From Macrostomum lignano (Eukaryota): a stretch of DNA of 64,000 nucleotides. Positions within the stretch are counted from its first letter, which is position 1, and each line of letters opens with the position of its first letter. Positions 24,369-63,870 of the stretch are shown piece after piece. The notes under the pieces were generated by a model. It saw nothing but the letters and a program-made list of their open reading frames with translations. It was not told where the DNA came from and did no database searches. The stretch lies in NCBI GenBank assembly GCA_002269645.1, contig NIVC01003604.1, positions 24,472-88,471 on the forward strand, given 5' to 3'. Made by a program: the position numbers and the translations under genes.

Positions 24369-24590
24369 TTATAAAGGCCAATAGATTTTGAATTGTGACA
24401 CACCGCCACGTCCGCCAGCAGCTTTAATGATCGCCAAGCCTAACGGCTCATCGAGTTTTCTTACGTCACTGCCAGTCTGACCCTCGACTGCGACAGTCTG
24501 CAACACAGTGCCGTCACTCCGCATCAAACAAACCACTTGCCCTGAACACTCGCTGACAAACAGCAGACCCGACCGATTTGAGAAACCGGA
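24369..24590 (-). pseudogene. 3' fragment of the Cys-finger/coiled-coil/NHL gene family (copy 0)
   Basis: Translates as [51 protein letters not shown], the last propeller blade of the family, with a frameshifted end. Upstream it is replaced by a GGGATTTGGGAAGC tandem array. Confidence 0.85.
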
Positions 24591-24935
24591 GGAATTTGGG
24601 ATTCGGGAAGCTTGGGTATTCAAGAAGCTTGTGGGTTTTGGGAAGCTTGGGGATTTGGAAAGCTTGGGGATTTGGAAAGCTTGGGGGATTTGGAAAGCTT
24701 GGGGGATTTGAGAAGGTTGGGGATTTGGGAAGCTTGGGGGATTTGGGAAGCTTGGGGGATTTGGAAAGCTTGGGGGATTTGAGAAGGTTGGGGATTTGGG
24801 AAGCTTGGGGCATTTGGGAAGGTTTGGGATTTGGGAAGCTTGGGGGGATTTGGGAAGGTTTGGGCGATTTGGGAAGCTTGGGGGGATTTGGGAAGGTTGG
24901 GGATTTGGGAACCTTGGGGGATTTGGGAAGCTAGA
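24590..24935. repeat. ~17-18-bp GGGAAGCTTGGGGGATTT tandem repeat
   Basis: Direct tandem periodicity abutting the copy-0 fragment. Confidence 0.9.
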
Positions 24936-25563
24936 TACCCACTTTAGCAGACGCTCACTGTTCGCATGTGCCATGCGGCACACACAGCAAACATTTTGAC
25001 CAAAATTTGTCAACTGTCAGTTGACATCTGAGACTATAAAATCTCATTATTGGTACTTTCCTTCAGTTTAAAAGGACAGTTAAGACAAAGTCTCGAAGTC
25101 TCAATTCACAAGCAGTGGTTCAGTTGGTAAGTGGACATAGGACTGCTCTATCAAGCTTAAGTTTGGTCGCCAGGAGGGAGGCAACTGCTTCATTTACAAT
25201 TGGAAAAATTCCCGCTAATCTTAGTGACCTTTGCGCCTACCTTATTGGATTTTGAACACATAATCTGAAAATCCTTGAGATATTACTAAATAACTTTATT
25301 AACAAAGTAGTCAATTGTTCAAATATTTCTTGTAAAAAAATTGAAATAAAAAAATAATGGTTTCAGTTTAGAGAAATCAGATTTTAGCGCAGAAACGAAC
25401 AAAAAGTACAAAAATAGCAAAAGAATGAAACACTACATAAAAATAAAAAACATAAAACTTGGCAGTTGATAAAAATTGTTAATTACATTGCTGGTATTCA
25501 TGTATTAGTTAAATTTCCAAATTTTGAGTAAATTCTCTTGATGAGTATCAGACATGCTAAATA

Positions 25564-26493
25564 CACTCAGCAAGTCAAAAGTTGCACCCGCTAAGCGAGA
25601 TAAAAATTTTCTTTCTTATTGCGACAACTTCTCACTCACAATTCAACCCTGAAATTACGCAACTAAGCCGCCGCGAGGAAGGGAATTAAATAAAAAATAA
25701 ACGTCATTCGCAGGGGGGCCGTAGCCCAGCGGTAGCGCAGCTGCTCTGGTGTGCCGCGACCCAGGCTCGATTCCAAGTGCAGTCACATTAATTTGGGGCT
25801 GAATTGGAATCCCGGCTTGGCTTGGCTCTGCTCGTGCAATTAACGGCCTTGAGAGCCAACCCCCCAAGGCGCAGTGAAGTGTACATGCCTAACGATAATA
25901 TAAAGTTAGGGCCGCTGTACACTCCTGTGTGAGTGTGTGCCTGCGTAACGTATCCGCGCGCTTGTATGCCTGCTCAGTGGAGTCGGCGGAATGGGCAGCA
26001 ATGCCTCTCGCCGGTTGTGTGCCTATGTCGCTTAAAGTGCGCCAGGGTGCACACAACCCCCATGCCACTAATAAAAAAAACTTCATTCGCACAAAATCAT
26101 AACAATTTCTTTTTTCACGCAATATGCAGTTGGGATCGCAAAGCTAAATAACGCGTGAGATCTCCTCGCACGCAGAAGTGCGGCGACTCTGCGGGGCATC
26201 CGAAGGATGAGGCGGTGCAGAAGGTCTTGGTGAAGCTGCTGCCAAGCCTTTTCAATGGCATGACGCAGCTCCGCAAAATTCTGTGGTGGATTTTCTTTTC
26301 AAATGCTGCGTTTTAGGAAATCCCAGACATGCTCGATCTGGGGGACCGGGAGGGCCAGCGCAGGCAGTGCGTTGTGATCCTGAACAGTCCCCCAAGTAGC
26401 AATAAGCTTCGCGCGTGCCGTAACCTGTGTCACTCGCAAAGTGAGAAAAATTCATCTCGCTTGGATGATGGAACTTTTGACTGTTGCTGAGTG
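25564..26493. mobile_element. Tc1/mariner-type non-autonomous element containing a nested SINE
   Basis: Imperfect TIRs starting CACTCAGCAA..GTCAAAAGTT, flanked by TA on both sides. The flanks rejoin into the shared array-unit sequence seen at ~47215-47250. Confidence 0.7.
25713..26055 (+). mobile_element. tRNA-derived SINE, family A
   Basis: Head GGCCGTAGCCCAGCGGTAG (A box) and GGCTCGATTCC (B-box-like). The body matches 11497-11818 in reverse and 26755-26905. Confidence 0.75.
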
Positions 26494-26754
26494 TATATTA
26501 TTATGATAGATTTTGTTACACTAACTCAAAGTAACTCACAATTTTAAGAAAGGCAAACTCATTGACTTCAAATTTAAATTCGAAAATTAGTTTGCTAAAA
26601 ATTGATCAACAGCCCTGCCGATATGAGTGAAAGTTTCTAGAAGACTTGAACGGAAAAAAATATCGCATAACTGCATACCCTCTAAGCAATCTAAACACAG
26701 ACCTACGTAGGCAATCAAAAACTTTTATGAAGTTACGAGCTAAGTTACGAGCTA

Positions 26755-26905
26755 ACCCCCAAGGCACAGTGAAGTGTGCATGCTTAGCGATAAATAAAAT
26801 TAGGGTCGCTGTGTGTGAGTCTGCTCAGAAGAGTCGGCTGAATGCTCAACAATGTCTCTCGCCGGTTGTGTGACAGTACCGATTAAGGTGCGCCAGGGTG
26901 CACAC
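26755..26905 (+). mobile_element. 3' fragment of SINE family A
   Basis: CCCCCAAGGCACAGTGAAG...CTCGCCGGTTGTGTG...GTGCGCCAGGGTGCACAC is shared with 25860-26055. Confidence 0.7.
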
Positions 26906-27131
26906 AGTCACTGCTTTTAAAACTCTCCGAATGAAAAATTTAGCCCTAGAAATAACCTAAAACAACTGTACTGACTAACTCATATTACTAACATCTAACA
27001 GCCTATAACTAAGACAGAGCTAATTAATGAAAATTTTCAAGGAACGAAATTAAATGTAGATAAAAAACAACTGAATAACGCATCAAAGAAGCTTAAAATA
27101 GTAAACAGATCAGAATGAATGAACTAAAAAG

Positions 27132-28652
27132 TTACACAGTCAACTTATACAATCCAATTAATTTTGAATCTTGACACACCGCCAGCAGCTTTGGGCTTTC
27201 TTCAATGATCGCCAAGCCAAATGGGCTATCAACTTTACTCATACCACTGCCAGCCTCACCCTCGACTCCGACAGTCTGCAGCACAGTGCCGTCACTCTGT
27301 ATCACACGAACTACATGCCCTGAATTCTCACTGACACACAGCAGACCTGACCAATGAGTCGCGACACCAACAGGTCCACGAAGCTTGTCAAGACGACTTT
27401 GCTTAGTCGGGTAGGTCGAGATCAGCTGATCGCTGGCGAGACACACTTTGTAGAGCTTGCCACCTTCATAGTCAGCCAGTAGCAGCGCGTTGTCAATTAC
27501 AGACATGCCCTCCATGAATTTACCAGGGTTACCGACACCGACCAATGTGATTTTGGTCTGAAGCTGACCGCTGTCTTTATCGATGCACAGCACTGACCAT
27601 TCCGGGCTGCCTTTGCTCAAAGCAAATATCTTGTCAGAGCTGCAGGCCAAGGCAAATAATTTGACTGGATGACCCAGGCTGCTCGAGTTGAAAGCCTGCG
27701 TCACGCGGCCGCTGAGGTCCGTCACCTTCAAAGTACCATAGTCAGCGACATAAAGAGTCTGTCGCTTGCTGTCACAGCAGAGTCCAGCGACAGGTTTTGA
27801 GACATCAATGTCGAGCTGTAGTTGCGCTTTCACTAAGCCATCAACTGAGCAGGCAAGAAGGTAGTTTATCTTATTTTTAGGATGAAAACTAACGAAGAGA
27901 CACGGCTGTGGCAGCTCTCTGTCAGAGACCTCCTTGACCACCTTGCTCTGAGAATCCACGTAGAAGTCTTGCGTGTTGCTGCATGATGACACATAATATG
28001 GAGAACCCGGTAGATCTTTGATTTCAGACTGAAATTCAAAAATTGGTTTTTCTGCACTAAGAGACTCTGCTGACCCGCACAGCTGCATCACATCAATCAG
28101 GTGTCTGTCAATCAGCAGCTGCAAGTCCCTCACACAGCCGCTCACATCGCCCACAGTCCTTCCAATGCCTCTCTTAGAGTTTTCGGTAATGATCGGGCCA
28201 AACATCGTCTGCAACTCTTCACTCCTAATATCGAATGCGCTAGAAATTTCAAACATCTTATTGAAGTCATTGTGCTTTTCTGCTTCCGTCACTTCTCGCT
28301 CATACTCCTGCAGAGCGGACAACTGCTGCAGATTCTGCAACACGCTGTCGTGTCTCTCAGTCAGTCGCTTTGTCACAGCTGCCTTCCACTTAATCAGCGA
28401 GTCCACAGCCGACTCAAACAGCTCCTCAGTCTCTTGCAGCTCAACTGACAGAGCTTGCTGCTGCATCCGAAATTCTTTCTGCAATTTTAGAAATGGCTTC
28501 AGCTTTCCCTGCATATTTTTGTACAGAACTCGCACAATTTCTCTGTCCTGCTCAATGTGTTTCTCACACAATGGCTGTGGGATTCGAAAACCAGTGCCAC
28601 ATACGGGATCGGTGCAGCCTTTAATAAAGCAAGAAGTGCTCCGCTCCGACAT
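27132..28652 (-). CDS. Cys/His finger - coiled coil - NHL-type beta-propeller protein (RING-less TRIM-NHL-like), copy 1, intact, 506 aa
   Basis: Uninterrupted ORF. N-terminal C-x4-C-x15-C-x2-H, heptad-rich region ([24 protein letters not shown]), C-terminal NHL-like repeats ([37 protein letters not shown]; SPFGLAII). Confidence 0.85.
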
Positions 28653-28741
28653 TGAGTTGCAACTGAAATATGATATTATAGTAAGTTTTATACAGAAATT
28701 GTAAAGCCATTTTTTGACAGAAAGCTATAACTGGTGTGAAT

Positions 28742-31700
28742 CACAGATACTATAAACACTAGATAGGCCACTCCAGCTAATTTTCACAACACGACAGTTT
28801 ACTTTACTTTCTGCTTAGTAGTAGTAAAAACATTTTAGCGTTATTTATATTTTTTAAAAATAAAAAAACAGATGAATGCAATGCAGCAATTATATTGATT
28901 TTATTTGCAAAAAGAAACTTATAATTATACTTTCCACAATTCAAAGCAACATTGTGAATGCTTTAGATTGCATTGAAGGCTATATTATTGCAGTCAACTA
29001 TTGTATATTTAGCAAATACGAGCTATATCATATACTCCATAATCCATATTCGTGTAGCAAAATAGAAAGATTTCTCATCTTAATCAGCTCATCTGTTTGT
29101 GAAACTCGCAGCGTGCTGTCGAAGAACAGGGGGTCGCCAGTCACTCTTGTTCAGAGGCAGCATTCAGCACGGCCCAACAGATAAAAAAAACTGGCGAATG
29201 CGCCTCTTCTAAGTCCAGGGATGTATCCGATGGAGAGCCAATCCTCAGTGGTTTCGTAACAGGCAGCTGATAAGCAGCAGGACTTTTGTGGTGCAGCTGC
29301 AATGAGCTGCTGATGAGATGACATCCTTTGACCAGAGCACCCCTGACTGCGAGCGCCCTGCCGCCCAGTCGACCGCTGGAAGCTGCGCTATAGCCACGCC
29401 TCAAAAGTCCATGGATGCACGACTGCGCTGTACTTGCCTTGACCATCGAGAGTTGCTGCTGCAGCCGCTTGATTTGCCTGTCGCTTTCGGGATTGCTGCT
29501 GCAGCCGCTTGATTCGCCTGTCACTTTCGGGATCGTTGCTGCAGCCGCTTGATCGTTGCCTCTAGCGCTTGGAACCCGCAAATCGGCTGCAGAGGTGAGA
29601 GCTTTCAGCCGCAACAGCTGTTCTCGGCGCAGAATCTGGTAGCCGAAGGTTGCTCTGCCACAGCACTGGCAGCAGGCAAGTCGCAGGCTCGGCTGCAGAT
29701 AGATTGCTAATAGGCCCCAGCACTGGAGGGTACATGTCGTCTGCCTCTTCATCGTTTATCAGTCCTTTGCACAGAGCTGGTAGCTGGTCTATTTGAACGA
29801 GCCGAGGCAGCATCAACTCTTGGTGTGGGATTGCGTCCCAGCGAAAACAGATGTCTTGCACATCCGTGGCACTTTGTAAGGCAGCAGTAGGCCTCGTCCA
29901 TAAAGTGCAAGCTGAACACACGTAGGCCCCGTGATTTAATTGTTTATAAAGGTCAATATCCACGCTCCTGCAGTAGCTGCTGCCAGCGCTTCGCCAGTGT
30001 CATCTTTTGGTAATTTATGCATTCGCAACGGATTGTTCTTTCTCGGATGTTAATAGCACTAGTACAGAGCTCGTGCAAGTGGGAGCACAGCAGTGGTTCG
30101 AATCAAAACATTTCTCGAGTACGAGATTAGATAGAAAAGCTAGTATGCACTCGAACTTTCTTTAACTCTGAATCTTGTCCTGTTCATCTATATATAAGCT
30201 TGTATTTAAGCTAGGGGGCGACCCAGTCCCGGGCCCGGGCCCGAAAAGTCGGGAATCCCGACCAAAATCGTGGCCCGACCCGGGCCCGGGCCCGACCCTA
30301 AAAAAGTCGGGAAATCGGGACAAGTCTTTTTTCCCTAAAGGCACTAACCGCGTGCGAATAAGAATAAAATTATTTTTATTCACAGCACAGCACAACACTC
30401 AGTTAAGCATCGCATCAGCACTCAAGACTCAAGCACTGCACGACTGCAGTAATAGTAATAGATGATATGATGTGAAGTAGCAATATCATTGATTTGTAGT
30501 ATGCTCTTAGCGTGAGCGTCTGTGACTGTGACCGTGAGCGTCAGCCACAGCCAGTTTCCACTTTCCAGGAAGATCGGATTTTTTCCAGGAAGATAAAATT
30601 AAAACATAGTTTTGCAATACTTTTTTGCAATATTGATTCCACTTTACACGCTGCAGGCTGCAGCCTAAAAGCAAAAATATGATTCTTAAAAAAGTTGATT
30701 TGTCAATTTTAAGCTTTTGTAAATAACATTTCCTATTTACATTCCAAGAAGTACCTATTAAGGGCCAAGGCTACCATTTTTCCAAGAAGTTTGCTATCTG
30801 TCAGAGTTTGTAATCGTGTTCATATTTGTATTGTATTCGTAGGTAGTTGTAGTCGTAGACTCATAGTATCATATTCGTAATCATATTCGTTTAGGTAGGT
30901 AGGTGAGCAGGTAGGCAGGTATCAGCTAATTACTTGTATTTCCATTGTCTGTTTGCCTGTTCTGTTGAGACAGTTGAGTGTTGTGTTGTGTTGTCACTTC
31001 ACTTGTGTTCTGTTCTGTTGTCTTGTCTTGTTGTCTTATTGAATACTGACTGTGTACATGGCTCTTTACATTGAAGCTATGTAAAGGAACTAAAAATTCA
31101 AATAAAAGAATCAATCAATTGATTTGGTTCTTACTTCCTTATTGCTTCCAATGCCAAGTGCCTTACACTTAATGCTTCAGCTTTTCTTCTTTTTGATTAC
31201 TGCCACTGCCAGTGCCAGCCGCACTACCGCAGTGCCTGCTTGCCTACCTCACTGCCTATTAGTGTCACTGTCACTGGCACACACACAGTACTTGTGCCAC
31301 ACAGTGACATTGAATTTGAACTATTGGGTATATTGATATTTGAGTATTAAGTCTTTTAATGTAACTCTTATCTATTCTGAAGTCTTAACTAATGTATTAA
31401 ATAAAAATAATATTTATTATATTATATATTTAATATATATTTAATTTAATATATTATATTTATTATATTTATATTATTATATATTCAATATATTTATATA
31501 TTATAATATATTTAATGTTTATCATATATTTATTATACATTTAATATATTATATTAGATTTAATATATCTATATATTTATTATATATTTAATAGTAATCT
31601 GCATATGCTAAAAGTATTAAGATTTATTATGATTTTTTTTCCAATTATTGAGCTGTCCTAAAGATCTTGTCCCGAATTCCCGAGGCCCGACCCGGGCCCG

Positions 31701-32187
31701 AGTCCTCATTCCCGGGCCCGACCCGGGCCCGACTTTGGCTGTCCCGGTCGCCCCCTAATTTAAGCACGATTCGCCACCCCCAAATTTTCTAAACCACAAC
31801 CTCTCAACCCCCACCCCTAACGCAGGCTGGCTATGTCCAGTCCTTTATTTTCTATCCCACCACCAGTGGGCCTAAATTATCGATCCACTCACCCTGCCTT
31901 ATACGAAACTGATATTAACCCTATTCCAGACTACCCCCCTTCCTCCACTTTGAAAGATAGCGGCATTGTACACTGTCTGTCGCGTCTTAATGTACACCAT
32001 TACTGCACAAAACAAGTTAGTTGTTTATGGCGTTAGCAAAACGATGTCTCAAAAACAGTCACTTGATTTGTCTAATTTAGCAAATAATACTGTTGCTTCC
32101 TTTCATTGCTACTAAGCAGAAAGTAGAATAAAAAACTTGCCCAGAAAATTAGCCTGAGTGGCCTATCTAGTGTTTATAGTATCTGTG
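28742..32187 (-). mobile_element. Degenerate THAP-bearing (P-element-like) DNA transposon
   Basis: 32-bp perfect TIR CACAGATACTATAAACACTAGATAGGCCACTC with further imperfect similarity inward; 8-bp TSD GTGTGAAT at 28734-28741 and 32188-32195. Frameshifted THAP motifs at ~30110-29830 (CCAPTC, HKLP, KRWQQLL, YVCS.HF, WDAIP). A paralogous empty site is at ~39850-39890. Confidence 0.75.
30212..31757. mobile_element. Non-autonomous hAT-type element nested in the P-like element
   Basis: 12-bp TIR TAGGGGGCGACC; 8-bp TSD ATTTAAGC at 30204-30211 and 31758-31765; subterminal CCCGGGCCCG palindromes at both ends; no coding capacity; AT-rich interior. Confidence 0.85.
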
Positions 32188-33782: not shown

Positions 33783-34222
33783 CTACGAACAGATGCGAAT
33801 AAACTTTAAAATTACAGTCAACTTATAAAGGCCAATCGATTGTGAATCTTGACACACCGCCAGCAGCTTAGGGCTACCTTCAATGATCGCCAAACCGAAT
33901 AAGTCAGCAATTTCATCACCGTCACTGCCAGTCTGACACTCGACTTCGACAGACTGCAGCACAGTGCCGTCACTCCGCATCAAACGAAGCACCTGCCCAT
34001 CACACTCGCTGACAAACAGCAGACCCGAGCGATGAGCCGCGACACCAACAAGTCCACGAAGCTTGTCAAGACGAATTCGCTTGGTCAGGTAGGTCGAAAT
34101 CAGCTAACTGCTGGCCAGACAAACTTTGTAGAGGTTGCCACCGGCATAGTCGGTGAACAGCAATGCGTTTTCAATTACAGACATGCCATCTGTAAATTTA
34201 CCAGAGATACGGACACCAACCA
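33783..34222 (-). pseudogene. 3' fragment of the NHL-like family (copy 2)
   Basis: Homology starts abruptly at [17 protein letters not shown]. In-frame TAG after VCLASS, and the normal stop is lost. Confidence 0.85.
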
Positions 34223-34497
34223 AGGTATTTTAAAGATTAGGATATTTAAGAGAGATGTATTATAAAAATGTCACAATTAATGAAACACTTTGAAAACATG
34301 GTGACCCTCTAATACAACTGTATACTGTACTCACAACTCATAATATGAGGAATAAACAGCACAAAATAACTCTAACAGAATGCGAATACAATGAAGCGTC
34401 AATTAACGACATTAACGGTACATACGCTCATAAAACAACAATTAACAGAAACGTCGAAAATAGTTTACGGCCCACGTAGGGATAAAAAAACAAAAAA

Positions 34498-36024
34498 TTA
34501 CATAGTAAGCTTATAAAGGCCAATTGAACTTAAATTTTGACACACCGCCAGAAGCTTGGGGCTTTCTTCAACGATTGCCAAGCCCAATGGGTCATCAATG
34601 TCATCACCGTCACTACTGTCAGCCTCACCCAATACTTTTACCGTCTGCAGCACAGTGCCGTCACTCTGCATCAAACGAACCACATGCCCTGAACGCTCGC
34701 CGACAAACAGCAGACCCGACCGATGAGCCGCGACACCAACAGGTCCACGAAACTTTCCCAGAGAACTTCGCTTGGAAGGGTAGGTTGAGATCAGCTGACC
34801 ACTGGTAAGACACACTTTGTAAAGCTTGTTAGCCGCAAAGTCAGTAAGCAGCAGGGCATTGTCAACTACAGACATCATGCCCTGAGTAAATTTATCAGAG
34901 ATACTGGCTGTAACCAAAGTAATGTTGGTCTGCAGCTGACCGCTGTCTTTATCGATGCACAGCACTGACCATTCTGGTTTGCCTTTGCTCAAAGCAAATA
35001 TCTTGTCAGAGCTGCTGGTCACGGCAATAAAGTTAACTGGCCGTCCCAGGTTGCTCGAGTTGAAGACCTGCGTCACGCAGCCGCTGAGGTCCGTCACTTT
35101 CACTGTATCAAACTGAGCAACATAAAGAGTCTGTCGCTTGCTGTCACAGCAGAGTCCAGCGATATTATTTGCGATATCAATGTTTAGCTGAACTTTTGCC
35201 TTTACTTTGCCGTCGACTGAGCAGGCAAAAAGGTAGTTCATCTTATTATTAGGACGAAAACTAACGAAGAGACACGGCTGTGGCAGCTCTCTGTCAGTGG
35301 GCTCCTTGACCACCTTGCTCTGAGAATCCACGTAAAAGCCTTGCGTGTTGCTGCATGATGACACATAATATGGAGTTCCTGGCAGATTTTGTATTTTAGA
35401 CTGAAACTCACAGATTGGCTTTTCTGCAGTAAGAGGCTTTTCTGACTCGCACAGCTGCATCACATCACTCAGGTGTCTGTCAATCAGCAGCTGCAAGTCC
35501 CTCACACAGCCGCTCACATCGCCCACAGTTCTTCCAGTGCCTCGCTCAGAGTTTTCTTTACCAGTATGGCCGAATTTGACCAGAAACTCTTCACTCTCAA
35601 TATCAAATGCGACAGAAATCTCAAACATCTTATTGAATTCATTGTGCTTTTCTGCTTCCGTCACTTCTCGCTCATACTCCTGCAGGGCAGACAACTCCTG
35701 CAGATTCTGCAACACGCTGTCGTGTCTCTCAGTCAGTCGCTTTGTCACAGCTGCCTTCCACTTCATCAGCGAGTCCACAGCCGACTCAAACAGCTCCTCA
35801 GTCTCTTGCAGCTCAGCTGACAGAGCTTGCTGCTGCATCCGAAATTCTTTCTGCAATTGCGAAAAAGTTTTCAGTCTTAGCTGCATACAACTGTGCAACT
35901 GATAAGCCTTTTGTCTGTCTTGCTTGAGATGATTCACACACAGAGGCTTTGGGATTCGAGCACCGGTGCCAGACACAGGAGCGGTGCAGCTTTTGATAAA
36001 GCAAGAAGTACTCGGCTCCGACAT
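34498..36024 (-). CDS. Cys/His finger - coiled coil - NHL-type propeller protein, copy 3, intact, 508 aa
   Basis: Uninterrupted ORF colinear with copy 1. Confidence 0.85.
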
Positions 36025-37205: not shown

Positions 37206-37289
37206 TGAAATATTTCAGGCGTCCAACTTTGCGAGTAAAAAATAGATATTCGTCAGGGAAAGTTTAACAAAAGATTTGATCAGAATTCG

Positions 37290-38325: not shown

Positions 38326-39773
38326 TTACACAGCGTCAAAAAAGCTTACAATGTAATTATCACGAATGTATAATGAACTTAAATAATTATACACACTAAG
38401 CTTATAAATGCCAATCGATTTTAAATTTTGACACACCACCAGCAGTTTAGGGCTTCCATCAACGATTGCCAAGCCCAATGGGTTGTCAAGTTTTCTTCCA
38501 CCACTGCCAGTCTGACCTTCGACTGCGACAGTCCGCAGCACAGTGCAGTCACTCTGCACCAAACGAACCACATGCCCTGAACTCTCGCTGACAAACAGCA
38601 GACCTGACCGATGAGCCGCGACACCAACAGGTCCACGAAACTTTTCAAGAGGGCTTCGCTTAGTAGGGTAGGCTGAGATCAGCTGACCGCTGGTGACACA
38701 TTGTAGAGCTTGCCACCTTCATAGTCAGTGAGCAGCAGTGCGTTGTCAATTACAGACATGCCCTCGACATATTTACCAGAGGAACTAATACCAACCAAGT
38801 TAATTCTGGCCAGCAGCTGACCGCTGTCTTTATCGATGCACAGCACTGACCATTCTGGTTTGCCGTTGCTCAAAGCAAATATCTTGTCAGAGCTGCAGGC
38901 CAAGGAAAAAGTTGACTGGCCCTCCTAGGTTGCTCGAGTTGAAGACCTGCGTTACGCAGCCGCTCAGGGCCGTCACCTTTACTTCATCAAACTGAGCGAC
39001 ATAAAGAGTGTGTCGCTTGCTGTCACAGCAGAGTCCTACAACAGTTTTTGAGGTATCAATGTAGAGCTGCAGCCCGGCTTTCACTAAGCCCTCGATTGAG
39101 CAGGCAAGGTGGTTTATCTTATCATTAAGATGAAAACTAATGAAGAGACACGGCTATGGCAGCTCTCTGTCAGGGCCCTGTTTGACCACATTGCTCTGAG
39201 AATCCACGTAAAAGCCTTGCGTGTTTCTGCATGATGACACATAATATATGGAGAACCCGGCAGATCTTTTATCATAGATTGAAACTCACAGATTGGCTGA
39301 TCTGCACTAAGAGACTCTGCTGACTCGCACAGCTGCATCACATCACTCAGGTGTTTGTCAATCAGCAGCTGCAAGTCTCTCACACAGCCGCTCACATCGC
39401 CTACAGTCCTTCCAGTGCCTCGCTCAGAGTCTTCGGTAATAGACGTGCCAAATACCATCTGTAACTCGTTACTCTCAATATCGAATGCGCCAGAAATCTC
39501 AAACAGTTGAGATTTCAGCGAGTCCACAGCCGACTCAAACAGCTTCTCAGTCTCTTGCAGCTCAGCTGACAGAGCTTGCTGTTGCATCCGAAAGTCTTTC
39601 TGCAATTTCAGCAATGGCTTCAGCTTTTTCTGAATATTTTTGCATAGATCTCGCACAATTTCTATGTCCTGCTCAATGTGTTTCTCACACAATGGCTGTA
39701 GGATTCGAATACCAGTGCCACATGCGGGATCGTTGCAGCATTTGATAAAACAAGAAGTGCTCGGTTCGGACAT
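38326..39773 (-). pseudogene. Full-length but disrupted NHL-like gene (copy 4)
   Basis: Split across ORFs 39114-39773, 38887-39084, 38679-38903 and 38326-38571 by frameshifts. An internal deletion removes most of the coiled coil (AVDSL joins to KSQLFEIS). Confidence 0.88.
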
Positions 39774-41455: not shown

Positions 41456-42783
<1,328 letters not shown>

Positions 42784-43588: not shown

Positions 43589-45109
43589 TCACACAGTAAA
43601 AGTATAAAAACTAATTGATTTTAAATTTTGACACACCACCAGCAGCTTGGGGCTTCCTTCGATGATCGTCAAGCCCAATGGGTTGTCAAGTTTTCTTCCG
43701 CAAATGCCAGTCTGACCCTCCACTGCGACAGTCTGCAGCACAGTGCCGTCACTTTGCATCAAACGAACCACATGCCCTGAACGCTCGCTGACAAACAGCA
43801 GACCCGACGGATGAACCGCGACACCAACAGTTCCACGAAACTTCTCCAGAGGACTTCGCTTGGTCGGGTAGGTCGTAATCAGCTGACCGCTGGCGATGCA
43901 CACTTTGTAGAGCTTGCCACCGGCATAGTCAGTGAGCAGCAGCGTATTGTCGATTACAGACATGCCCTCGACATATTTACCAGAGGGACTGGCTCCAATC
44001 AAGGAAATTTTAGTCTGCAGCTGACCGCTGTCTTTATCGATGCACAGCACTGACCATTCTGGGTTGCCTTGGCTCAAAGCAAATATCTTGTCAGAGCTGC
44101 AGGTCAAGGCAAAAAAGTTGACTGGCTGTCCCAGGCTGCTCGAGTTGAAAACCTGCGCCACGAAGCCGCTCAGGTCCGTCACCTTCACTGCGTCAAACTG
44201 AGCAACAAAAAGACTCTGTCGCTTGCTGTCACAGCAGAGCCCTACAACAGTTTTTGAGACATCAATGTCGAGCTGTAGCTGCGCTTTCACTAAGCCGTCG
44301 ACTGAGCAGGCAAGAAGGTGGTTTATCTTATCATTAGGATGAAAACTAACGAAGAGACACGGCTGTGGCAGCTCTCTGTCAGTCGGATCGTTGACCACCT
44401 TGCTCTGAGAGTCCACGTAAAAGTCTTGCGTGTTACTGCATGATGTCACATAGAAAGGAGAACCCGGCAGATCTTTAATTTCAGACTGAAACTCACAGAT
44501 TGGCTTTTCTGCGGTAAGAGGCTTTTCTGACTCGCACAGCTGCATCACATCACTCAGGTGTCTGTCAATCAGCAGCTGCAAGTCCCTCACACAGCCGCTC
44601 ACATCGCCCACAGTCCTTCCAGTGCATCGCTCAGAGTCTTCGTTAGACGCCGTGCCACACGTCGTCTGCAACTCTTCACTCTTTATATCTAACGCGTTAG
44701 AAATTTCAAACATCTTATTGAAGTCATTGTGCTCTTCTGCTTCCGTCACTTCTCGCTCATACTCCTGCAGAGCGGACAACTGCTGCAGATTCTGCAACAC
44801 GCTGTCGTGTCTCTCAGTCAGTCGCTTTGTCACAGCTGCCTTCCACTTCATCAGCGAGTCCACAGCCGACTCAAACAGTTCCTCAGTCTCTTGCAGCTCA
44901 ACTGACAGAGCTTGCTGCTGCATCCGAAATATGGTTTGCAATTTCAGCAAGGGCTTCATCTTTGTATGTAAATTCTTGTGCAGCTCACGCACCCTGTGCC
45001 TGTCTTGTTCGAGATGTCTTTCACACAGTGGCTGACGTATTCGAGCACCGCTGCCAGACACAGGATCGGTGCAGCCTTTGATAAAGCAGGAAGTGGTTGG
45101 CTCCGACAT
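43589..45109 (-). CDS. Cys/His finger - coiled coil - NHL-type propeller protein, copy 6, intact, 506 aa
   Basis: Uninterrupted ORF colinear with copies 1 and 3. Confidence 0.85.
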
Positions 45110-45511
45110 TGAGTTGGAACTGAAAATACTTTAAAATAATGAAAAATACTTATCCTGTGAAAATACTGAAAAACTTTTAACAAAGCCAAAAATGCCATAT
45201 TTAAGTTGATATGATGCGAGAGGGACCAAATGACGTAAGTCACAACTTTAAAGTTACTTTTGAAACCATATAACTTGCTTACAAACGGAAACTTCAATTT
45301 TGCGGTCAGACCCAGATGAATAGGCAATTTAAATTTGTACGGGACTATGGTATTAATGGCATCGATAATTGTATCTATAGCACTGGTGTGTTTAGGACAA
45401 AGCTTTGCCTAGCTCTTCATTTTGTACGCTGTCTGCATCAAGGATGAATAAATAGATTAGATTGCTCCTATGAGCCCATTTCTGATGATGGGGGAAATAT
45501 TTTAAATATGG

Positions 45512-47776: not shown

Positions 47777-49393
<1,617 letters not shown>

Positions 49394-51184: not shown

Positions 51185-52798
51185 TCAATGATCGCCACCG
51201 CAACTACCAGCCGCACTGGTAAAATTACACAGTAAGCTTATAAATGCCAATTGCCTTTGCATCCTGACACACCGCCAGCAGCTTGGAGCTTCCTTCGATG
51301 ATCGCCAAGCCGAAAGGGTAATCATGTTTTCTTCCGCCACTGCCAGACTGACCCCGACTTCCACGGACTGCAGCACAATGCCGTCACTGCGCATCACACG
51401 AACCACATGCCCTTCGCTGACAAACAGCAGACCCGAGCGATGAGCTGCGACAGCAACAACTTCACGAAACTTATCAAGGCGACTTCGCATGGTCGGGTAG
51501 GTCGAGATTAGCTGACCGCTAGCGATGCACATTCTGTAGAGATTGTCAGCGGCACAGTCGGTTAGCAGCAGCGCGTTGTCGACTACAGACATACCCTCAA
51601 TGAATTTACCCGAGGGACTGACACCAACCAAAGTTATGTTGGTCTGCAGGTGACCGCTGTCTTTATCGATGCACAGCACTGACCATTCTGGGTTGCCTTT
51701 GCTCAAAGCAAATATCTTGTCAGAGCTGCAGGCCAAAGCAATAAGGTCAACTGGCTGTCCCAGGCTGCTCGAGTTCAAAACCTGCGTCACGCAGCCGCTC
51801 AGGTCCGTCACTTTCACTACATCAAACTGGGCGACATAAAGACTCTGTCGCTTGCTGTCACAGCAGAGTCCTACAACAGGTTTCAAGACATCAATGTCGA
51901 GCTGCAGCTGCGCTTTTATTAAGCCATCGACTGAGCAGGCAAGAAGGTAGTTTATCTTATCATTAGGATGAAAACCAACGAAAAGACACGGCTGTGGCAG
52001 CTCTCTGTCAGTGACCTCCTTGACCACCTTGCTCTGAGAATCCACGTAAAAGCCTTGCGTGTTGCTGCATGATGACACATGGAGAGAGGAACCCGGCAGA
52101 TGTTTAATTTCAGACTGAAACTCACAGATTGGCTTTTCTGCACTAAAAGGCTCTGCTGACTCGCACAACTGCATCACATCAATCAGGTGTCTGTCAATTG
52201 GCAGCTGCAAGTCCCTCACACAGCCGCTCACATCGCTCACAGTCCTTCCAGTGCCTCGGAAGGACTGTGGGCGACAGTCCAGTCGTGCCACAGTCGTGCC
52301 ACCAATAGGTGCCACGACTATTAACTCCTTGTTAATAGTCGTGCCACCTGCTATCTGCAACTCTTCACTCTCAATATCGAATGCGCTGGAAATCTCAAAC
52401 ATTTTATTGAAGTCATTGTGCTTTTCTGCTTCCGTCACTTCTCGCTCATACTCCTGTAGAGTGGACAACTGCTGCAGATTCTGCAACACGCTGTCGTGTC
52501 TCTCAGTCAGTCGCTTTGTCACAGCTGCCTTCCACTTCATCAGCGAGTCCACAGCCGACTCAAACAGTTCCTCAGTCTCTTGCAGCTCAACTGACATAGC
52601 TTGCTGCTGCATCCGAAAGTCTTTCTGCAATTCCGACAAAGTTTTCAGTTTGGTCTGTAAATTCTTGTGCAACTCACGCACCCTGTGCCTGTCCTGTTCG
52701 AGATGTCTTTCACACATTGGCTGACGGATTCGAGCACCGGTGCCAGACACAGGATCGGTGCAGCCTTTGATAAAGCAGGAAGTGGTCGGCTTCGACAT
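51185..52798 (-). pseudogene. NHL-like gene with a 20-aa linker insertion and a 1-nt frameshift in the last blade (copy 8; may still be translated)
   Basis: 537-aa ORF is colinear until SVEV, then shifts frame at ~51352. The normal tail ([21 protein letters not shown]) is present in the alternative frame. Confidence 0.75.
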
Positions 52799-55010
52799 TG
52801 AGTCGTAACTGAAAATATGATATTATAGTGAATTTAATACAGAAATTAGAAAGCCATTTTTCACAAAGCAAAGCTGACTAAAGCTGATGATAAATCTGAA
52901 CTCTGCAAAGCGTGACTTCATCACTCTAATAAAGCGCTCAGACGTTAGAAAGGTTATAATCGAAATGAGGCTCAACTTTGTAACCAAGCTAAACAATGCC
53001 ATATTTCAGTTTATGCTTTATTGTGTGAGTGACCTATTGAGGGTGTAATTCACAAGTTGCAACGCTCGTAGTAGCTTTTTTGATTAGAAGACTTTGGAAT
53101 GAGGCCTGCTTAAAAATTTAAGGCCTAAAAATGGGAATTTTACAATCAGAAAACTGGGCGACTAAGTTTTTTCGTCGGACAAAATTATAAATAACTGCAG
53201 ACGAAAATTTTACTAAATTTAAAGAGAGAACGTAGCTGATATGCAGAATTTATTAGGGTAGTAGTAGAAATTCCAGTTATTGAGTCATACCCGAAACGGA
53301 TACAAAAATATACGGTAAGGTACACAATTCCCAAAAATCTTGATATGCTACTTAAAAAGAGCTTATCTACAGTTCTTAGTAGTGAAATTTGCGTATTTTG
53401 CCTTTATAATAATGAAGCAAAAATGTATTTAATTTTCGAAATGTAAGAGCCAAATAGACTAGCAAAGCTTAACTTGCATGGCACTGTAATACGCTCGCAT
53501 TGATGGCATCAATACTTGTATCCATGCAACCGGGTGTTCAATACAAGACTTGCCTAGCCCTTCAGTTTTCTACTCTGTCTACACCAAGAATGAGTGAATA
53601 CCGTATAATAGGATCGCTGTTATGAGACCATTTCTGAGGATAAGAAACTCCTATGGCTTGAGGTCGGTTGAGACTTTAACAACTGAATTTTACAACTGAA
53701 AAGCTTGGAGACTAAGAGCTGTCTTTAAACTAAGGTAAATAAGTCCAGACGAAAATTGCTTTAGGTTTTAACGGTCAACATATGCAATATTTATTTAGTC
53801 AGTAGTGAAAATTATGGCTAATAAGTCGGGATGCAAAGCGAATACAAAAATATACCGTGGGTTTCAAAGATACTTGATATGCCAGTCACAAAAAGCGCTT
53901 TACTTATATTATTCTGCAGTAAATTTGTGTTATTTTGCTTTTATGATAGTGCTATGAAAGTGTATTAAATTTTACATAATATTTAAAGTTCTTAAAGCTG
54001 CAACTATTGCCTCTGATTTTCCAAATCCATATCCAGCGCGTGTGCAGGCGAGCGAGAGAGGCCGCGAACCCGAGGATGACATTTTATGGCTGCCACATCA
54101 AATTAAAGTACCTCTGCGCACACAAACTACTGAATAAAGAGTAGACGCTCTGCTTTTTAGCAAATTTAACCGCGAGTGACATGGCATGTCAAGTTGTTAT
54201 AGTAGCTGCAGTGGGATCGGAGATTTCAGGAGTTGATAATGGCTAGATAAAAACAGGATAAACTGTAGAGAGCAGTTCGTAATTACTCGAGAAAAAAACC
54301 TTATTATCACGCGTTAGTATGAAAAGTTTGTTGAAATAAATGATAATATCGCTCGTAAATGCCTATTTCGACAAAAATTTCCGACATACAAACTTACGAG
54401 TACAAAATAGATGTTCGTCAGGTACAAAAACCATTCACTGACATACAAATGCAATAAATATGTTACAACAATAAAAGCAATCAGCACAAATGTGTAAACC
54501 CTACCAAAAAATCGCTTTTTAGCGATCTAAATTAGACTTTACACAAATCAAACTGAGACCTCATTTGCTTATCATGCAACGCTGCTGTGCCAATCCGTCA
54601 TTACTTTGTCAAAAGTGATAAATCTGACCAGAGGCTTGATTGCTCATTCAAAATAGTTACAAATGACCTTAAACACATCGAACAGTTTACTTCAAATGCA
54701 AAGCAATGTAACGATTCTGGTGAGATTCTGCTTCATCCTGGTACATTTGCATATAAAGCATAGCGAGTCTCTCGTTATTTGCTTGATGTCATACGAGTAT
54801 TTTAATCACCAAAAGCGATAGTATCTTGCGTGAAAATGCTGTATTATAAAATTGGAAACAAACTAAGCAAAAATGAAAAATCAAATGCAGAAAAAAACTG
54901 ACACAAAGAGAATCATCAAAAGCTAAGCCAAGTAACATGCTTGCGAACCAGAATAAATTAAGGGTATCAAATAGATAGACAAATAGTTAGCAGGATTTTG
55001 TGAATGTGAA

Positions 55011-56531
55011 TTATAAATTCCGTCTATAAATACTAATAGACATGTTATTCTGGGTGACGGCCAAAAGCTCGGGGCTTCCTTCAATGATCGCCAAGCCAAA
55101 AGGGGAATCAAGTTTCCTAGCGCCACCATCAGCCTGACATTCCACTTCGACAGTCTGCAGCACAGTGCCGTCACTCCGCATCAAACGAACCACTCGCCCT
55201 GAACACTCGCTGACAAACAGCAAACCTGAGCGATGAGCCGCGACACCAACAGGTCCAGATAGCTTGTCAAGACGGCTTCGCTTGGTCGGGTAAGTCGAGA
55301 TCAGCTGACCGCTGGCGATGCACACTTTGTAGAGCTTGCCACCTTCGTAGTCAGTGAGCAGCAGCGTGTTGTCGACTACAGACATGCCTTCGGTGACTTT
55401 ACCAGAGGGACCGACGCCAACTAAGGTAATGTTGGTCTGCAGCTGACCGCTGTCTTTATCGATGCACAGCACTGACCATTCTGGGTTGCCTTTCCTCAAA
55501 GTAAATATCTTGTCAGAGCTGCAGGCCAAAGCAATAAGGTTGACTGGCTGTCCCATGCTGCTCGAGTTGAAAACCTGCGTCACGCAGCCGCTCAGGTCCG
55601 TCACTTTCACTGCGTCAAACTGAGCAACATAAAGACTCTGTCGCTTGCTGTCACAGCAGAGTCCTACAACAGTTTTTGAGACATCAATGTCGAGCTGTAG
55701 CTGCGCTTTCACTAAGCCGTCGACTGAGCAGGCAAGAAGGTAGTTTATCTTATCATTAGGATGAAAAATAATGAAGAGACACGGCAGTGGAAGCCCTCTG
55801 TCAGTCGGACCGTTGACCACCTTGCACTGCGAATCCACGTAAAAGTCTTGCGTGTTGCTGCATGATGTCACATAGAAAGGAGAACCCGGCAGATCTTTTA
55901 TTTTAGTCTGAAACTCACAGATTGGCTGATCTGCACAAAGTGAGTCTGCTGACTCGCACAGCTGCATCACATCACTCAGGTGTCTGTCAATTAGCAGCTG
56001 TAAGTCCCTCACACAGCCGCTCACATCGCCCACAGTCCTTCCAGTGCCTCGCTCAGAGTCCTTGTTAATAGTCGTGCCACCTGCCATCTGCAACTCTTCA
56101 CTCTGAATATCTAGCACGCCAGAGATCTCAAACATCTTATTGAAGTCATTGTGCTCTTCTGCTTCCGTCACTTCTCGCTCATACTCCTGTAGAGCGGACA
56201 ACTGCTGCAGATTCTGCAACACGCTGTCGTGTCTCTCAGTCAGTCGCTTTGTCACAGCTGCCTTCCACTTCATCAGCGAGTCCACAGCCGACTCAAACAG
56301 CTCCTCAGTCTCTTGCAGCTCAACTGACAGAGCTTGCTGCTGCATCCGAAATTCTTTCTGCAATTTCAGCAATGGTTTCAGCTTTGCCTGTAAATTCTTG
56401 TGCAACTCACGCACCCTGTGCCTGTCCTGTTCGAGATGTCTTTCACACAGTGGCTGACGTATTCGAGCACCGGTGCCAGACACAGGATCGGTGCAGCCTT
56501 TGATAAAGCAGGAAGTGGTCGGCTCCGACAT
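55011..56531 (-). CDS. Cys/His finger - coiled coil - NHL-type propeller protein, copy 9, intact, 506 aa
   Basis: The family start MSEPTTSC is at 56531, directly after a splice acceptor (ctaattgcag|acaaATG). The 49-aa upstream extension in the ORF track is not shared by the paralogues. Confidence 0.85.

Positions 56532-63584: not shown

Positions 63585-63870
<286 letters not shown>

What the first reader, a model, noticed from the sequence alone, without database searches (positions are those of the whole stretch)
24369..56531. Tandem array of at least 10 RING-less TRIM-NHL-like genes in active birth-and-death
Seen: ten same-strand copies (4 intact, 3 full-length disrupted, 3 fragments) of a single-coding-exon ~506-aa gene: short C-x4-C-x15-C-x2-H finger, coiled coil, NHL-type propeller. 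Established: B-box/coiled-coil/NHL is the TRIM-NHL architecture (Brat, TRIM71, NHL-2), whose NHL domain binds RNA; lineage-specific tandem TRIM expansions (e.g. fish finTRIMs, primate TRIM5 cluster) are often immune related. Inference: the finger is much shorter than a canonical B-box and I do not recognise this family, so this may be an undescribed, rapidly turning-over recognition or defence family.
Basis: partly seen in the sequence, partly recalled or inferred. Interest (0 to 1): 0.82.

Follow-up and report, generated by a model that had tools for sequence, protein, structure and literature searches.

The report
Flatworm tandem array of RING-less NHL-propeller genes
A 32-kb stretch of the flatworm Macrostomum lignano genome holds ten tandem copies (four intact) of an unnamed, apparently flatworm-restricted gene encoding a small zinc knuckle, a long coiled coil and a TRIM-type NHL propeller; copies are being gained, lost and recombined, and they differ mostly on the propeller's usual binding face.

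Summary
There are ten same-strand copies between 24359 and 56531: 4 intact, 3 full-length but broken, and 3 fragments, each a single coding exon of ~506 aa. The organism is Macrostomum lignano.

The protein has three parts. A one-zinc C-x4-C-x15-C-x2-H knuckle comes first; its four ligands are the only invariant columns across the family. It is followed by an unbroken ~97-residue heptad helix and two shorter helices. The C-terminal domain is a six-bladed NHL propeller closest to those of TRIM2/3/71/Thin.

There is no RING. B-box homology of the finger could not be shown. A CARD-like sequence hit in the coil was tested and rejected.

The family is large (~27 clusters at 50% identity) and invisible to Pfam. 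It was found only in M. lignano plus a few environmental contigs, and it is unnamed in databases and in the literature searched.

A near-identical sister array differs in copy number, in which copies are intact, in a LINE insertion and in mosaic gene-conversion tracts. Active birth-and-death is therefore well supported.

Selection is purifying overall (pN/pS 0.49). Replacements concentrate on the propeller's top face (0.68), which is not basic.

The most likely function is a non-catalytic dimeric adaptor with diversified binding specificity. A defence role or an RNA-binding role is untested.

The parts
24359..24572 (-). c1: 3' fragment (aa 435-506), flanked on both sides by an 18-bp minisatellite
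   Evidence: tblastn; tandem repeats at 23677-24014 and 24598-24932; counterpart S9 in the sister array
27132..28652 (-). c2: intact copy, 506 aa; carries an RNA-seq-derived gene model (P0005)
33813..34226 (-). c3: 3' fragment (aa 369-506), 275 nt downstream of c4
34498..36024 (-). c4: intact copy, 508 aa; the most divergent copy in the array (83-85% nt identity to the others)
38389..39773 (-). c5: dead full-length copy with a 125-nt deletion at codon 87, indels of -4, +2, -2 and -4 nt, and an in-register stop at codon 249. Its positional counterpart S8 (P0003) in the sister array is intact.
41495..42771 (-). c6: fragment (aa 278-502) in two pieces, 42187-42771 and 41495-41581, separated by ~0.6 kb of unidentified sequence
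   Evidence: no Pfam hit for the ORFs in the insert; not the LINE seen in the sister array
43589..45109 (-). c7: intact reference copy, 506 aa; carries an RNA-seq-derived gene model (P0001); 98% identical to S6 in the sister array
45014..45088 (-). c7 zinc knuckle, codons 8-32 (C8, C13, C29, H32)
   Evidence: The four ligands are the only invariant columns in 23-24 family members averaging 33-39% column identity. pLDDT is 87-94 in the N-terminal model.
44534..45022 (-). c7 helical scaffold, codons ~30-192: one ~97-residue helix followed by two shorter helices
   Evidence: AF2 N-terminal model with pLDDT 94-98 for the long helix; 3.5-residue hydrophobic periodicity and no conserved Gly or Pro; weak TRIM_CC hits in 3 of 23 members
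44705..44929 (-). Gene-conversion island, codons 61-135, where synonymous sites are also nearly identical among the subfamily copies. A second island covers codons 166-195.
   Evidence: pS is 0.03-0.07 here against 0.3-0.5 in the flanks. Third-position identity is 0.93-0.99 within the subfamily but 0.45-0.51 against distant paralogues.
43598..44497 (-). c7 six-bladed NHL beta-propeller, codons 205-504
   Evidence: pLDDT 81-93 and 25 strands. Foldseek TM-score normalised to the target is 0.77 for TRIM3, 0.74 for TRIM2 and 0.73 for TRIM71 and Thin, against 0.45-0.60 for WD40 propellers. phmmer against the PDB: Thin NHL, E=1.8e-7.
47777..49294 (-). c8: full-length copy with one premature stop (48155-48157, codon 380) and a 3-nt in-frame deletion. 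Its counterpart S5 has a different stop, at codon 60.
51225..52798 (-). c9: full-length copy with a 60-nt in-frame insertion (~52259-52318), a 6-nt deletion and a 1-nt deletion (~51354) that replaces the last ~43 residues. Its counterpart S2 is intact. Part of the chimeric gene model Mlig000357.g1.
55011..56531 (-). c10: intact copy, 506 aa; 99.7-100% identical to S1 in the sister array
45110..45135 (-). Conserved polypyrimidine tract plus AG (splice-acceptor-like) 4-12 nt upstream of the ATG. The c7 example is given; the same motif precedes every full-length copy.
   Evidence: alignment of the seven upstream regions

Best explanation
The locus is a tandem array of ten paralogues of an uncharacterised gene family, apparently restricted to Macrostomum or close relatives.

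Each intact gene is a single coding exon. It encodes a ~506-aa protein with no signal peptide and three parts: (i) a one-zinc CCCH knuckle at the extreme N-terminus, (ii) a ~97-residue heptad helix followed by two shorter helices, which is the layout of the TRIM antiparallel coiled-coil scaffold, and (iii) a six-bladed NHL beta-propeller most like those of TRIM2/3/32/71.

The protein has no RING and no other catalytic domain. It most probably works as a non-catalytic, coiled-coil-dimerised adaptor that presents two propellers. Ligands would be bound on the propeller's top face (the D-A and B-C loops). That face is where the paralogues differ, so different copies probably recognise different ligands. 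The ligands are more likely proteins than RNA, because this face is not basic.

The array evolves in three ways: unequal crossing-over (copy gain and loss), gene conversion (mosaic copies and a homogenised coil segment) and pseudogenisation (point stops, indels and TE insertion).

Shown here: the architecture, the family distribution, the selection pattern and the array dynamics. Inferred: dimerisation, binding on the top face, the nature of the ligand and the biological role.
For: - Copies and lesions.
- Organism and family: all named relatives are M. lignano hypothetical proteins. An exhaustive profile search of 1.84 billion cluster representatives finds ~27 family clusters that match in a single stretch. 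Every one that was looked up is from M. lignano or a JGI environmental contig.
- Zinc knuckle: the four ligands are the only invariant columns, and the motif occurs in all subfamilies but one.
- Coil: AF2 pLDDT is 94-98 for a single helix at residues 27-123, with two shorter helices after it. There is heptad periodicity and no conserved Gly or Pro.
- NHL propeller.
- Purifying selection: pairwise dN/dS is 0.36-0.53; pooled pN/pS is 0.49, CI 0.42-0.58.
- Top-face diversification: pN is 0.199 on the top loops against 0.081 on the bottom loops and 0.088 in strands, permutation p<1e-4. Family-wide entropy is 2.55 bits on the top loops against 1.96 on the bottom loops, p=3e-5.
- Non-basic face: net charge 0 to -9.
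- Birth-and-death and gene conversion.
- Transcription: the GenBank models are derived from RNA-seq (PMC5730564), and c2, c7 and c9/c8 carry such models.
Against: - There are no functional data of any kind.
- Dimerisation was not modelled.
- The assignment of loops to the top or bottom face rests on my reading of strand order from the AF2 secondary structure and the NHL repeat pattern, not on coordinates.
- Higher variability on the top face could reflect relaxed constraint rather than adaptive diversification; pN/pS there is still below 1 (CI 0.51-0.95).
- Six of the ten copies are dead, and overall dN/dS (~0.5) is high for an essential gene.
- Foldseek found no significant match for the N-terminal model, so the similarity to a TRIM coiled coil rests on helix layout and on weak PF25600 hits (3 of 23 members, best E 0.0028).
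Confidence: 0.6

Rival explanations
1. The family consists of RNA-binding post-transcriptional regulators of the Brat, LIN-41 or TRIM71 type. Each paralogue's NHL top face would read a different RNA motif, acting for example in the germline or in neoblasts.
For: The nearest sequence and structure relatives of the propeller include the RNA-binding NHL domains of TRIM71/LIN-41. Brat shows that a RING-less TRIM-NHL can function (established knowledge). The variation lies on the face that binds RNA in those proteins.
Against: The propeller's net charge is -13 to +2, and the top loops are 0 to -9. The RNA-binding NHL faces of Brat and LIN-41 are strongly basic (established knowledge, not re-measured here). 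Rapid copy turnover and frequent pseudogenes are atypical of conserved developmental regulators. The other close relatives, TRIM2/3/Thin, are not established RNA binders.
Confidence: 0.15
2. The family is an intracellular defence or restriction family, analogous to the TRIM5 cluster or fish finTRIMs. Variable propellers would recognise pathogen- or transposon-derived proteins, and avidity would come from coiled-coil dimers.
For: The genes form a lineage-restricted tandem expansion with copy-number and intactness differences between near-identical arrays. Replacements concentrate on the putative binding face, with pN/pS about 1.08 in the B-C loops. The family is large, with many tandem sub-arrays.
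Against: Positive selection is not demonstrable; top-loop pN/pS is 0.68 with a CI below 1. There is no RING or other effector domain. No data on infection or induced expression were found. The CARD-like hit that would have linked the family to innate-immune signalling was rejected.
Confidence: 0.15
3. The family is largely neutral and decaying. On this view it is a recently amplified, possibly retrogene-derived gene under weak constraint, whose variability and pseudogenes reflect drift rather than functional diversification.
For: Six of the ten copies are broken. dN/dS is about 0.5. The CDS is intronless in a genome that averages ~5 introns per gene (PMC5730564). The annotated transcripts include broken and chimeric models.
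Against: pN/pS is significantly below 1 (CI 0.42-0.58). Four 1.5-kb ORFs have stayed open at dS 0.2-0.34. The zinc ligands and ~50 other positions are invariant down to ~20-30% identity across ~27 clusters. The bottom loops are as conserved as the strands, so the variability is specific to one face.
Confidence: 0.1

Closest known systems
TRIM-NHL proteins (class VII TRIMs: TRIM2, TRIM3, TRIM32/Thin, TRIM71/LIN-41; Brat, Mei-P26, NHL-2)
   Same: The C-terminal six-bladed NHL propeller has these proteins as its best sequence and fold matches. It is preceded by a long helix plus two shorter helices, as in the TRIM coiled coil. A cysteine/histidine zinc site sits directly N-terminal to the coil, where a B-box2 would be. 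Brat shows that RING-less members of the family exist (established knowledge).
   Different: - No RING, no recognisable B-box and no filamin domain.
- Only ~506 aa, with an intronless CDS.
- 12-18% identity to solved NHL domains, and below Pfam's NHL threshold.
- A non-basic top face.
- No one-to-one orthology.
- A species-level tandem expansion with rapid turnover, whereas canonical TRIM-NHL genes are conserved and low in copy number.
Rapidly evolving tandem TRIM clusters (primate TRIM5/6/22/34, fish finTRIM and btr)
   Same: The mode of evolution is the same: same-strand tandem arrays, gain and loss of copies, pseudogenes, gene conversion, and variability concentrated on the surface loops of the C-terminal recognition domain.
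   Different: The recognition domain is an NHL propeller, not B30.2/PRY-SPRY. The RING effector is absent. Positive selection is not demonstrated here. No link to infection is known.
B-box2 zinc finger (for example TRIM5alpha B-box2, PDB 5k3q/2yrg)
   Same: In TRIM5alpha B-box2, C-x2-H-x7-C-x2-D-x4-C-x2-C, ligand pairs 1 and 3 (the first zinc site) are 15 residues apart (sequence shown). That matches the x15-16 spacing between C13 and C29 here. The position directly before the coiled coil is also the same. UniProt's automatic name for the distant member P0046 is 'B box-type domain-containing protein'.
   Different: The ligands of the second zinc site are missing, and the first pair is C-x4-C in most members. 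There is no Pfam zf-B_box hit, no B-box hit with the finger profile, and hhalign gives a probability of 0.2% with an ambiguous register. The C-x2-C subfamily scores nearly as well as a zinc ribbon (PF11331, 24 bits against a cut-off of 27).

Membership tests
TRIM-NHL (tripartite motif, class VII) | N-terminal RING finger | tested here: not met
   The ORFs start 7 residues before the CCCH knuckle. Pfam finds no RING in the window copies or in 10 distant members. The P0168 model named 'RING-type' by UniProt has no Pfam RING.
TRIM-NHL (tripartite motif, class VII) | One or two B-box zinc fingers (two zinc sites each) | tested here: not met
   Only four conserved ligands are present, enough for one zinc site. 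PF00643 is not hit in 23 members at E<=10 or in the full-length proteins. A finger-only profile hits no B-box chain in the PDB. hhalign against TRIM5 and P0085 B-box2 gives a probability of 0.2%. The spacing is compatible with a B-box2 that keeps only its first zinc site, which is a lead and not a test.
TRIM-NHL (tripartite motif, class VII) | Long coiled coil following the zinc finger(s), with helices that fold back (antiparallel dimer) | tested here: inconclusive
   The helix layout is 27-123, 127-152 and 167-190 at pLDDT 90-98, with heptad periodicity. PF25600 TRIM_CC is hit weakly in 3 of 23 members (best E 0.0028). Foldseek is uninformative. The dimer and its antiparallel geometry were not modelled.
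TRIM-NHL (tripartite motif, class VII) | C-terminal six-bladed NHL-repeat beta-propeller | tested here: met
   phmmer against the PDB: Thin NHL E=1.8e-7, TRIM71 about 1e-4, TRIM2 about 7e-4. The AF2 propeller has pLDDT 81-93 and 25 strands. Foldseek TM-score normalised to the target is 0.73-0.77 for TRIM3/2/71/Thin NHL. Pfam NHL is just below threshold (18-19.8 bits against 20).
TRIM-NHL (tripartite motif, class VII) | Basic RNA-binding top surface (the Brat, LIN-41 and TRIM71 subset) | tested here: not met
   The propeller's net charge is -13 to +2 and the top loops are 0 to -9. This is a charge count only, with no electrostatic surface computed.
TRIM-NHL (tripartite motif, class VII) | E3 ubiquitin-ligase activity | not testable with these tools
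   Not expected without a RING; a biochemical assay is needed.
CARD / death-fold domain (lead from the NLRP1 CARD hit) | Globular bundle of six helices of ~90 residues | tested here: not met
   The lead was an N-terminal profile hit to NLRP1 CARD at E=0.0017. Against it, Pfam finds no CARD in any of 23 members. The region lies inside a single uninterrupted helix with pLDDT 94-98, with heptad periodicity and no conserved Gly or Pro breaks.
Birth-and-death multigene family with gene conversion | Tandem paralogues with pseudogenes and fragments; copy gain and loss between closely related haplotypes or homeologues; mosaic conversion tracts | tested here: met
   There are ten copies, six of them defective. 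A sister array with 97.6-99.7% identical flanks has two extra copies, a single gene in place of c5-c2, different lesions in corresponding copies and a LINE-split copy. Mosaic identities occur, for example S8 is 96% c5-like at its 5' end and 99% c7-like at nt 901-1200. A low-dS island is confined to the subfamily.

The most novel reading that the evidence does not exclude
This would be a flatworm-specific, diversifying intracellular recognition system. Dozens of RING-less TRIM-NHL-derived adaptors would use the NHL propeller top face as a hypervariable sensor, the role B30.2 plays in TRIM5 and finTRIMs, against pathogens or transposons. A gene-conversion-homogenised coiled coil would keep the paralogues able to heterodimerise, multiplying specificities combinatorially. 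It would be the first NHL-based immune-type receptor repertoire.
Probability: 0.12. Interest if true: 0.8.

Novelty: new variant of a known kind. Interest (0 to 1): 0.45.

Why it matters
M. lignano is a transgenic model for stem cells, regeneration and sexual selection, yet this family of dozens of transcribed genes has no name and no Pfam domain, and it is not mentioned in the literature I could search.

It shows that the conserved, low-copy TRIM-NHL scaffold can be stripped to a zinc knuckle, a coil and a propeller. In that form it is amplified into fast-turnover tandem arrays whose variation sits on the propeller's binding face. Until now that evolutionary mode has been associated with SPRY-type TRIMs.

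The array and its sister copy also give a clean, datable example of unequal crossing-over, domain-restricted gene conversion and pseudogenisation in a neopolyploid genome.

In practical terms, several GenBank models here are chimeras of neighbouring paralogues. Also, the 96-99% identical coil island offers a single RNAi target for the whole subfamily.

Tried and rejected
1. CARD or death-fold domain in the coil. The lead was NLRP1 CARD as the top unbiased PDB hit of the N-terminal profile (E 0.0017). I rejected it because Pfam finds no CARD in 23 members, AF2 places the region in one confident continuous helix, and the region shows heptad periodicity with no helix breakers.

2. B-box homology of the finger. 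Pfam, a finger-only profile against the PDB and hhalign against TRIM5 and P0085 B-box2 were all negative. Only the spacing argument remains.

3. Foldseek on the N-terminal model. Nothing was significant, with all E above 1, which is usual for long helices.

4. A nucleotide-level functional element (RNA structure, small-RNA target or antisense gene) as the cause of the low-dS island. I rejected this because synonymous conservation disappears against distant paralogues and the copies are mosaics. Gene conversion explains the island. The antisense ORFs are probably a by-product of stop-poor antisense codons.

5. Two homology searches returned nothing useful: the P0085 B-box/coil fragment and the N-terminal family profile.

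6. Literature and supplement searches for the gene IDs, and for NHL or TRIM expansions in flatworms, found nothing.

7. The ~0.6-kb insert in c6 as a truncated copy of the LINE that split S4. No similarity was found, and Pfam does not recognise its ORFs.

8. An ordinary TRIM-NHL orthologue. I rejected this because of the missing RING, B-box and filamin domains, 12-18% identity to solved NHL domains and the absence of relatives outside Macrostomum.

Full report
**Observation**

The window is eukaryotic DNA from the flatworm Macrostomum lignano. The intact copies are identical or nearly identical to GenBank 'hypothetical protein BOX15_Mlig…' entries of assembly GCA_002269645.1.

tblastn of one intact ORF against the window finds ten copies, all on the minus strand and all between 24359 and 56531.
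- Four are intact: c2 27132-28652, c4 34498-36024, c7 43589-45109 and c10 55011-56531.
- Three are full-length but broken. c5 has a 125-nt deletion, four frameshifts and a stop. c8 has a single stop at 48155-48157. c9 has a 60-nt insertion and a 1-nt deletion that rewrites the C-terminus.
- Three are 3' fragments: c1, c3 and c6.

Each CDS is one uninterrupted exon. A conserved polypyrimidine-AG motif lies 4-12 nt upstream of every ATG. This fits SL trans-splicing or a 5'-UTR intron, both common in this species (PMC5730564).

DNA similarity between copies is essentially confined to the CDS plus about 100-150 nt on either side, at 83-91%. Intergenic DNA is 67-73% identical or cannot be aligned.

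The flanks are ordinary multi-exon genes: an M24 peptidase, a DEAD-box helicase exon and an MFS-like exon. Their introns are full of 15-28-bp minisatellites.

**Protein architecture**

Pfam sees almost nothing; the NHL repeat scores 18 bits against a cut-off of 20.

*Propeller.* phmmer against the PDB hits the NHL domains of Drosophila Thin (E=1.8e-7), TRIM71 and TRIM2. An AlphaFold2 model places a confident propeller at residues 201-506, with pLDDT 81-93 and 25 strands, which is six blades plus a closing strand. Foldseek gives its best target-normalised TM-scores to TRIM3 (0.77), TRIM2 (0.74), and TRIM71 and Thin (0.73). Seven-bladed WD40 propellers score 0.45-0.60. The NHL assignment is sound.

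*Finger.* The motif C-x(2-4)-C-x(15-16)-C-x2-H is present in every subfamily but one. Its four ligands are the only invariant columns in alignments of 23-24 members averaging 33-39% identity. This is strong evidence for a single structural zinc site.

Whether the finger is a degenerate B-box could not be established. Pfam zf-B_box hits none of the members. A finger-only profile finds no B-box in the PDB. hhalign against genuine B-box2 sequences (TRIM5alpha from the PDB, and P0085) gives a probability of 0.2% and cannot fix the register.

Three things remain in favour. The spacing matches: in TRIM5alpha B-box2 the first and third ligand pairs, which form zinc site 1, are 15 residues apart, as here. 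The position immediately before the coil also matches. UniProt automatically names one distant member a 'B box-type domain-containing protein'. The C-x2-C subfamily scores about as well as a zinc ribbon. I therefore describe the finger as a one-zinc knuckle of uncertain origin.

*Helical region.* With a 23-sequence alignment, AlphaFold2 predicts the N-terminal 204 residues at mean pLDDT 87. There is one unbroken helix at 27-123 (pLDDT 94-98), then helices at 127-152 and 167-190. Hydrophobic periodicity peaks at 3.5 residues, and no Gly or Pro is conserved within the long helix. This is the layout of the TRIM coiled coil, and three of 23 members weakly hit Pfam TRIM_CC. Foldseek is uninformative on such helices, and no dimer was modelled.

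One surprise was tested and rejected. The N-terminal profile's best unbiased PDB hits were the NLRP1 CARD (E about 0.002). However, no member hits the Pfam CARD model, and the region lies inside the confident continuous helix.

**Family**

An exhaustive HMM search of 1.84 billion cluster representatives finds about 27 clusters at 50% identity that match in a single stretch across finger, coil and propeller, or parts of these. It also finds thousands of generic multi-NHL proteins that match only the repeats.

Every family cluster I looked up is from M. lignano, apart from a few short JGI environmental contigs. One of these contigs is clearly a genomic family member; it encodes the conserved 'GDVSGGVRSLRFVIDRH' motif and ends in a microsatellite.

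Other subfamilies are also intronless and arranged in tandem. No paper in the searchable library mentions these genes or a TRIM-NHL expansion in flatworms.

The GenBank models derive from a genome-guided RNA-seq assembly (PMC5730564). Copies c2, c7 and c9/c8 carry such models, so several copies, including broken ones, are transcribed. Several of the models (P0002, P0004, P0006) are chimeras of adjacent paralogues.

**Selection**

Pairwise dN/dS among the five best copies is 0.36-0.53 at dS 0.20-0.34. Pooled pN/pS is 0.49, with a bootstrap CI of 0.42-0.58. Selection is thus purifying but relaxed, and the duplications are not very recent.

I assigned strands from the model and the NHL repeat pattern. 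On that assignment, replacements concentrate in the D-A and B-C loops, the canonical 'top' ligand-binding face. pN is 0.199 there, against 0.081 in the bottom loops and 0.088 in strands (permutation p<1e-4). pN/pS is 1.08 in the B-C loops.

The same asymmetry holds at whole-family depth: entropy is 2.55 bits on the top loops against 1.96 on the bottom loops, p=3e-5. Top-loop pN/pS as a whole is 0.68 (CI 0.51-0.95), so positive selection is not demonstrated.

One top loop (225-236) is nearly invariant across the family. The top loops carry a net charge of 0 to -9, unlike the basic RNA-binding faces described for Brat and LIN-41. That comparison draws on established knowledge and was not re-measured here.

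**Array dynamics**

Codons 61-135 and 166-195 form islands where synonymous sites are also frozen among the copies. pS is 0.03-0.07 there, against 0.3-0.5 in the flanks. Third-position identity in the island is 0.93-0.99 within the subfamily but only 0.45-0.51 against distant paralogues on other contigs. The cause is therefore gene conversion and not a nucleotide-level element.

About 53 kb of a sister array on contig NIVC01000989.1 was recovered. Its flanks are 97.6-99.7% identical to the window. The correspondence between copies is as follows.

| Window | Sister array | Relationship |
|---|---|---|
| c10 | S1 | 99.7-100% identical |
| c9 (broken) | S2 (intact) | corresponding copies |
| none | S3, S4 | extra copies; S4 is split by a 5.4-kb LINE (endonuclease, RT, RNase H) |
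| c8 (stop at codon 380) | S5 (stop at codon 60) | 95% identical, with different lesions |
| c7 | S6 | 98% identical |
| c6 (fragment) | S7 | corresponding fragments |
| c5-c4-c3-c2 block | S8 (one intact gene) | S8 is a mosaic: 96% c5-like at its 5' end, 99% c7-like at nt 901-1200 |
| c1 (fragment) | S9 | corresponding fragments |

Copy gain and loss, independent pseudogenisation, TE disruption and gene conversion have thus all occurred since the two arrays separated. 'Active birth-and-death' is directly supported.

**Interpretation**

The proteins are best described as RING-less, TRIM-NHL-like adaptors. A zinc knuckle caps a long, probably dimeric, coiled coil that presents NHL propellers. 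The variable top faces probably bind different ligands, more likely proteins than RNA.

Membership of the TRIM family in the strict sense fails on the RING and is unproven for the B-box. The resemblance lies in the coil-propeller module.

A speculative origin that fits the intronless CDS and the truncated N-terminus is a 5'-truncated retrocopy of a TRIM-NHL mRNA, later amplified in tandem. This is inference only.

A defence role, as in the TRIM5 cluster or finTRIMs, is compatible with the evolutionary mode but has no direct support. An RNA-regulatory role is disfavoured by charge. Pure decay is disfavoured by dN/dS and by deep conservation.

**Verdict**

This is a real and well-delimited feature. 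It is a new variant of a known kind and of moderate interest. It would become highly interesting only if the variable propeller face proves to be an adaptive sensor.

Noticed in passing
window 44705-44929 (c7 codons 61-135) and the homologous segment in every full-length copy; also codons 166-195: There is an island of near-identity at synonymous sites among the paralogues (pS 0.03-0.07 against 0.3-0.5 in the flanks). It is subfamily-specific and consistent with gene conversion confined to the most conserved part of the coil. It would make a single RNAi target for all copies.
   Followed up: yes
L005+L006+L001 (contig NIVC01000989.1, 142296-195232): A sister array has 97.6-99.7% identical flanks but a different copy content: two extra copies, a single mosaic gene in place of c5-c2, different lesions in corresponding copies, and one copy split by a 5.4-kb LINE (AP-endonuclease, RT, RNase H at L006:10951-16414). 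Whether it is allelic or homeologous is undetermined.
   Followed up: yes
P0002 (L005:10001-15302), P0004 (L006:10001-21182), P0006 (window c9 5' part joined to the c8 3' end): These GenBank and transcriptome gene models are chimeras that join neighbouring paralogues across several kb. They are probably transcript-assembly or mapping artefacts in a tandem array, or read-through transcripts.
   Followed up: partly
window, c7 residues ~83-146 (about 44672-44863, minus strand): The N-terminal family profile gives its best unbiased PDB hits to the NLRP1 CARD (E about 0.002), with a striking 'LSxxEYExV…A…xxKxFxLS' match. Structure prediction and periodicity indicate a continuous coiled-coil helix, so the similarity is treated as convergent or chance.
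   Followed up: yes
window 28165-28704, 35537-35902, 44622-45035 and 52251-52724 (plus strand): ORFs of 121-179 aa lie antisense to the coil-coding region of c2, c4, c7 and c9, and their products are Ser/Cys-rich and of low complexity. They are probably a by-product of the stop-poor antisense of E/Q/L/K codons. No evidence of coding was sought.
   Followed up: partly
window 45110-45135 and the equivalent position upstream of each full-length copy: A conserved polypyrimidine-AG (splice-acceptor-like) motif lies 4-12 nt before the ATG, preceded in c2, c4, c5 and c9 by 'ACTATAATATC'. There are two upstream sequence classes: c2, c4, c5, c9 and partly c7, against c8 and c10. It is unresolved whether this is a trans-splice acceptor, a 5'-UTR intron or a TATA-like promoter.
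   Followed up: partly
window 23677-24014 and 24598-24932: The terminal fragment c1 is bracketed on both sides by arrays of the same 18-bp minisatellite (GGGATTTGGGAAGCTTGG). This may mark the breakpoint that truncated the array.
   Followed up: no
window 1-23000 and 57000-64000: The flanking genes (M24 peptidase exons at 1896-3017 and 6657-7190, a DEAD-box exon at 23085-23651, an MFS-like exon at 59287-59706) have introns packed with strongly strand-skewed minisatellites of 15-28 bp. TRF reports 34 rows with score at least 400 window-wide, overlapping rows describing the same array; most lie in these flanks. These produce long spurious ORFs.
   Followed up: partly
window 41581-42187, inside fragment c6: About 0.6 kb of foreign sequence separates the last 29 codons of c6 from the rest. 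Its ORFs have no Pfam hit, and it is unrelated to the LINE in the sister array, so its identity is unknown.
   Followed up: partly
L004 (JGI sample 3300040801, contig Ga0450804_2025337): An environmental genomic contig encodes a family member with 31-34% identity to c7, including the conserved helix-3 motif upstream of the called ORF. The family therefore exists in at least one organism outside the reference genome; the taxon is unknown.
   Followed up: partly
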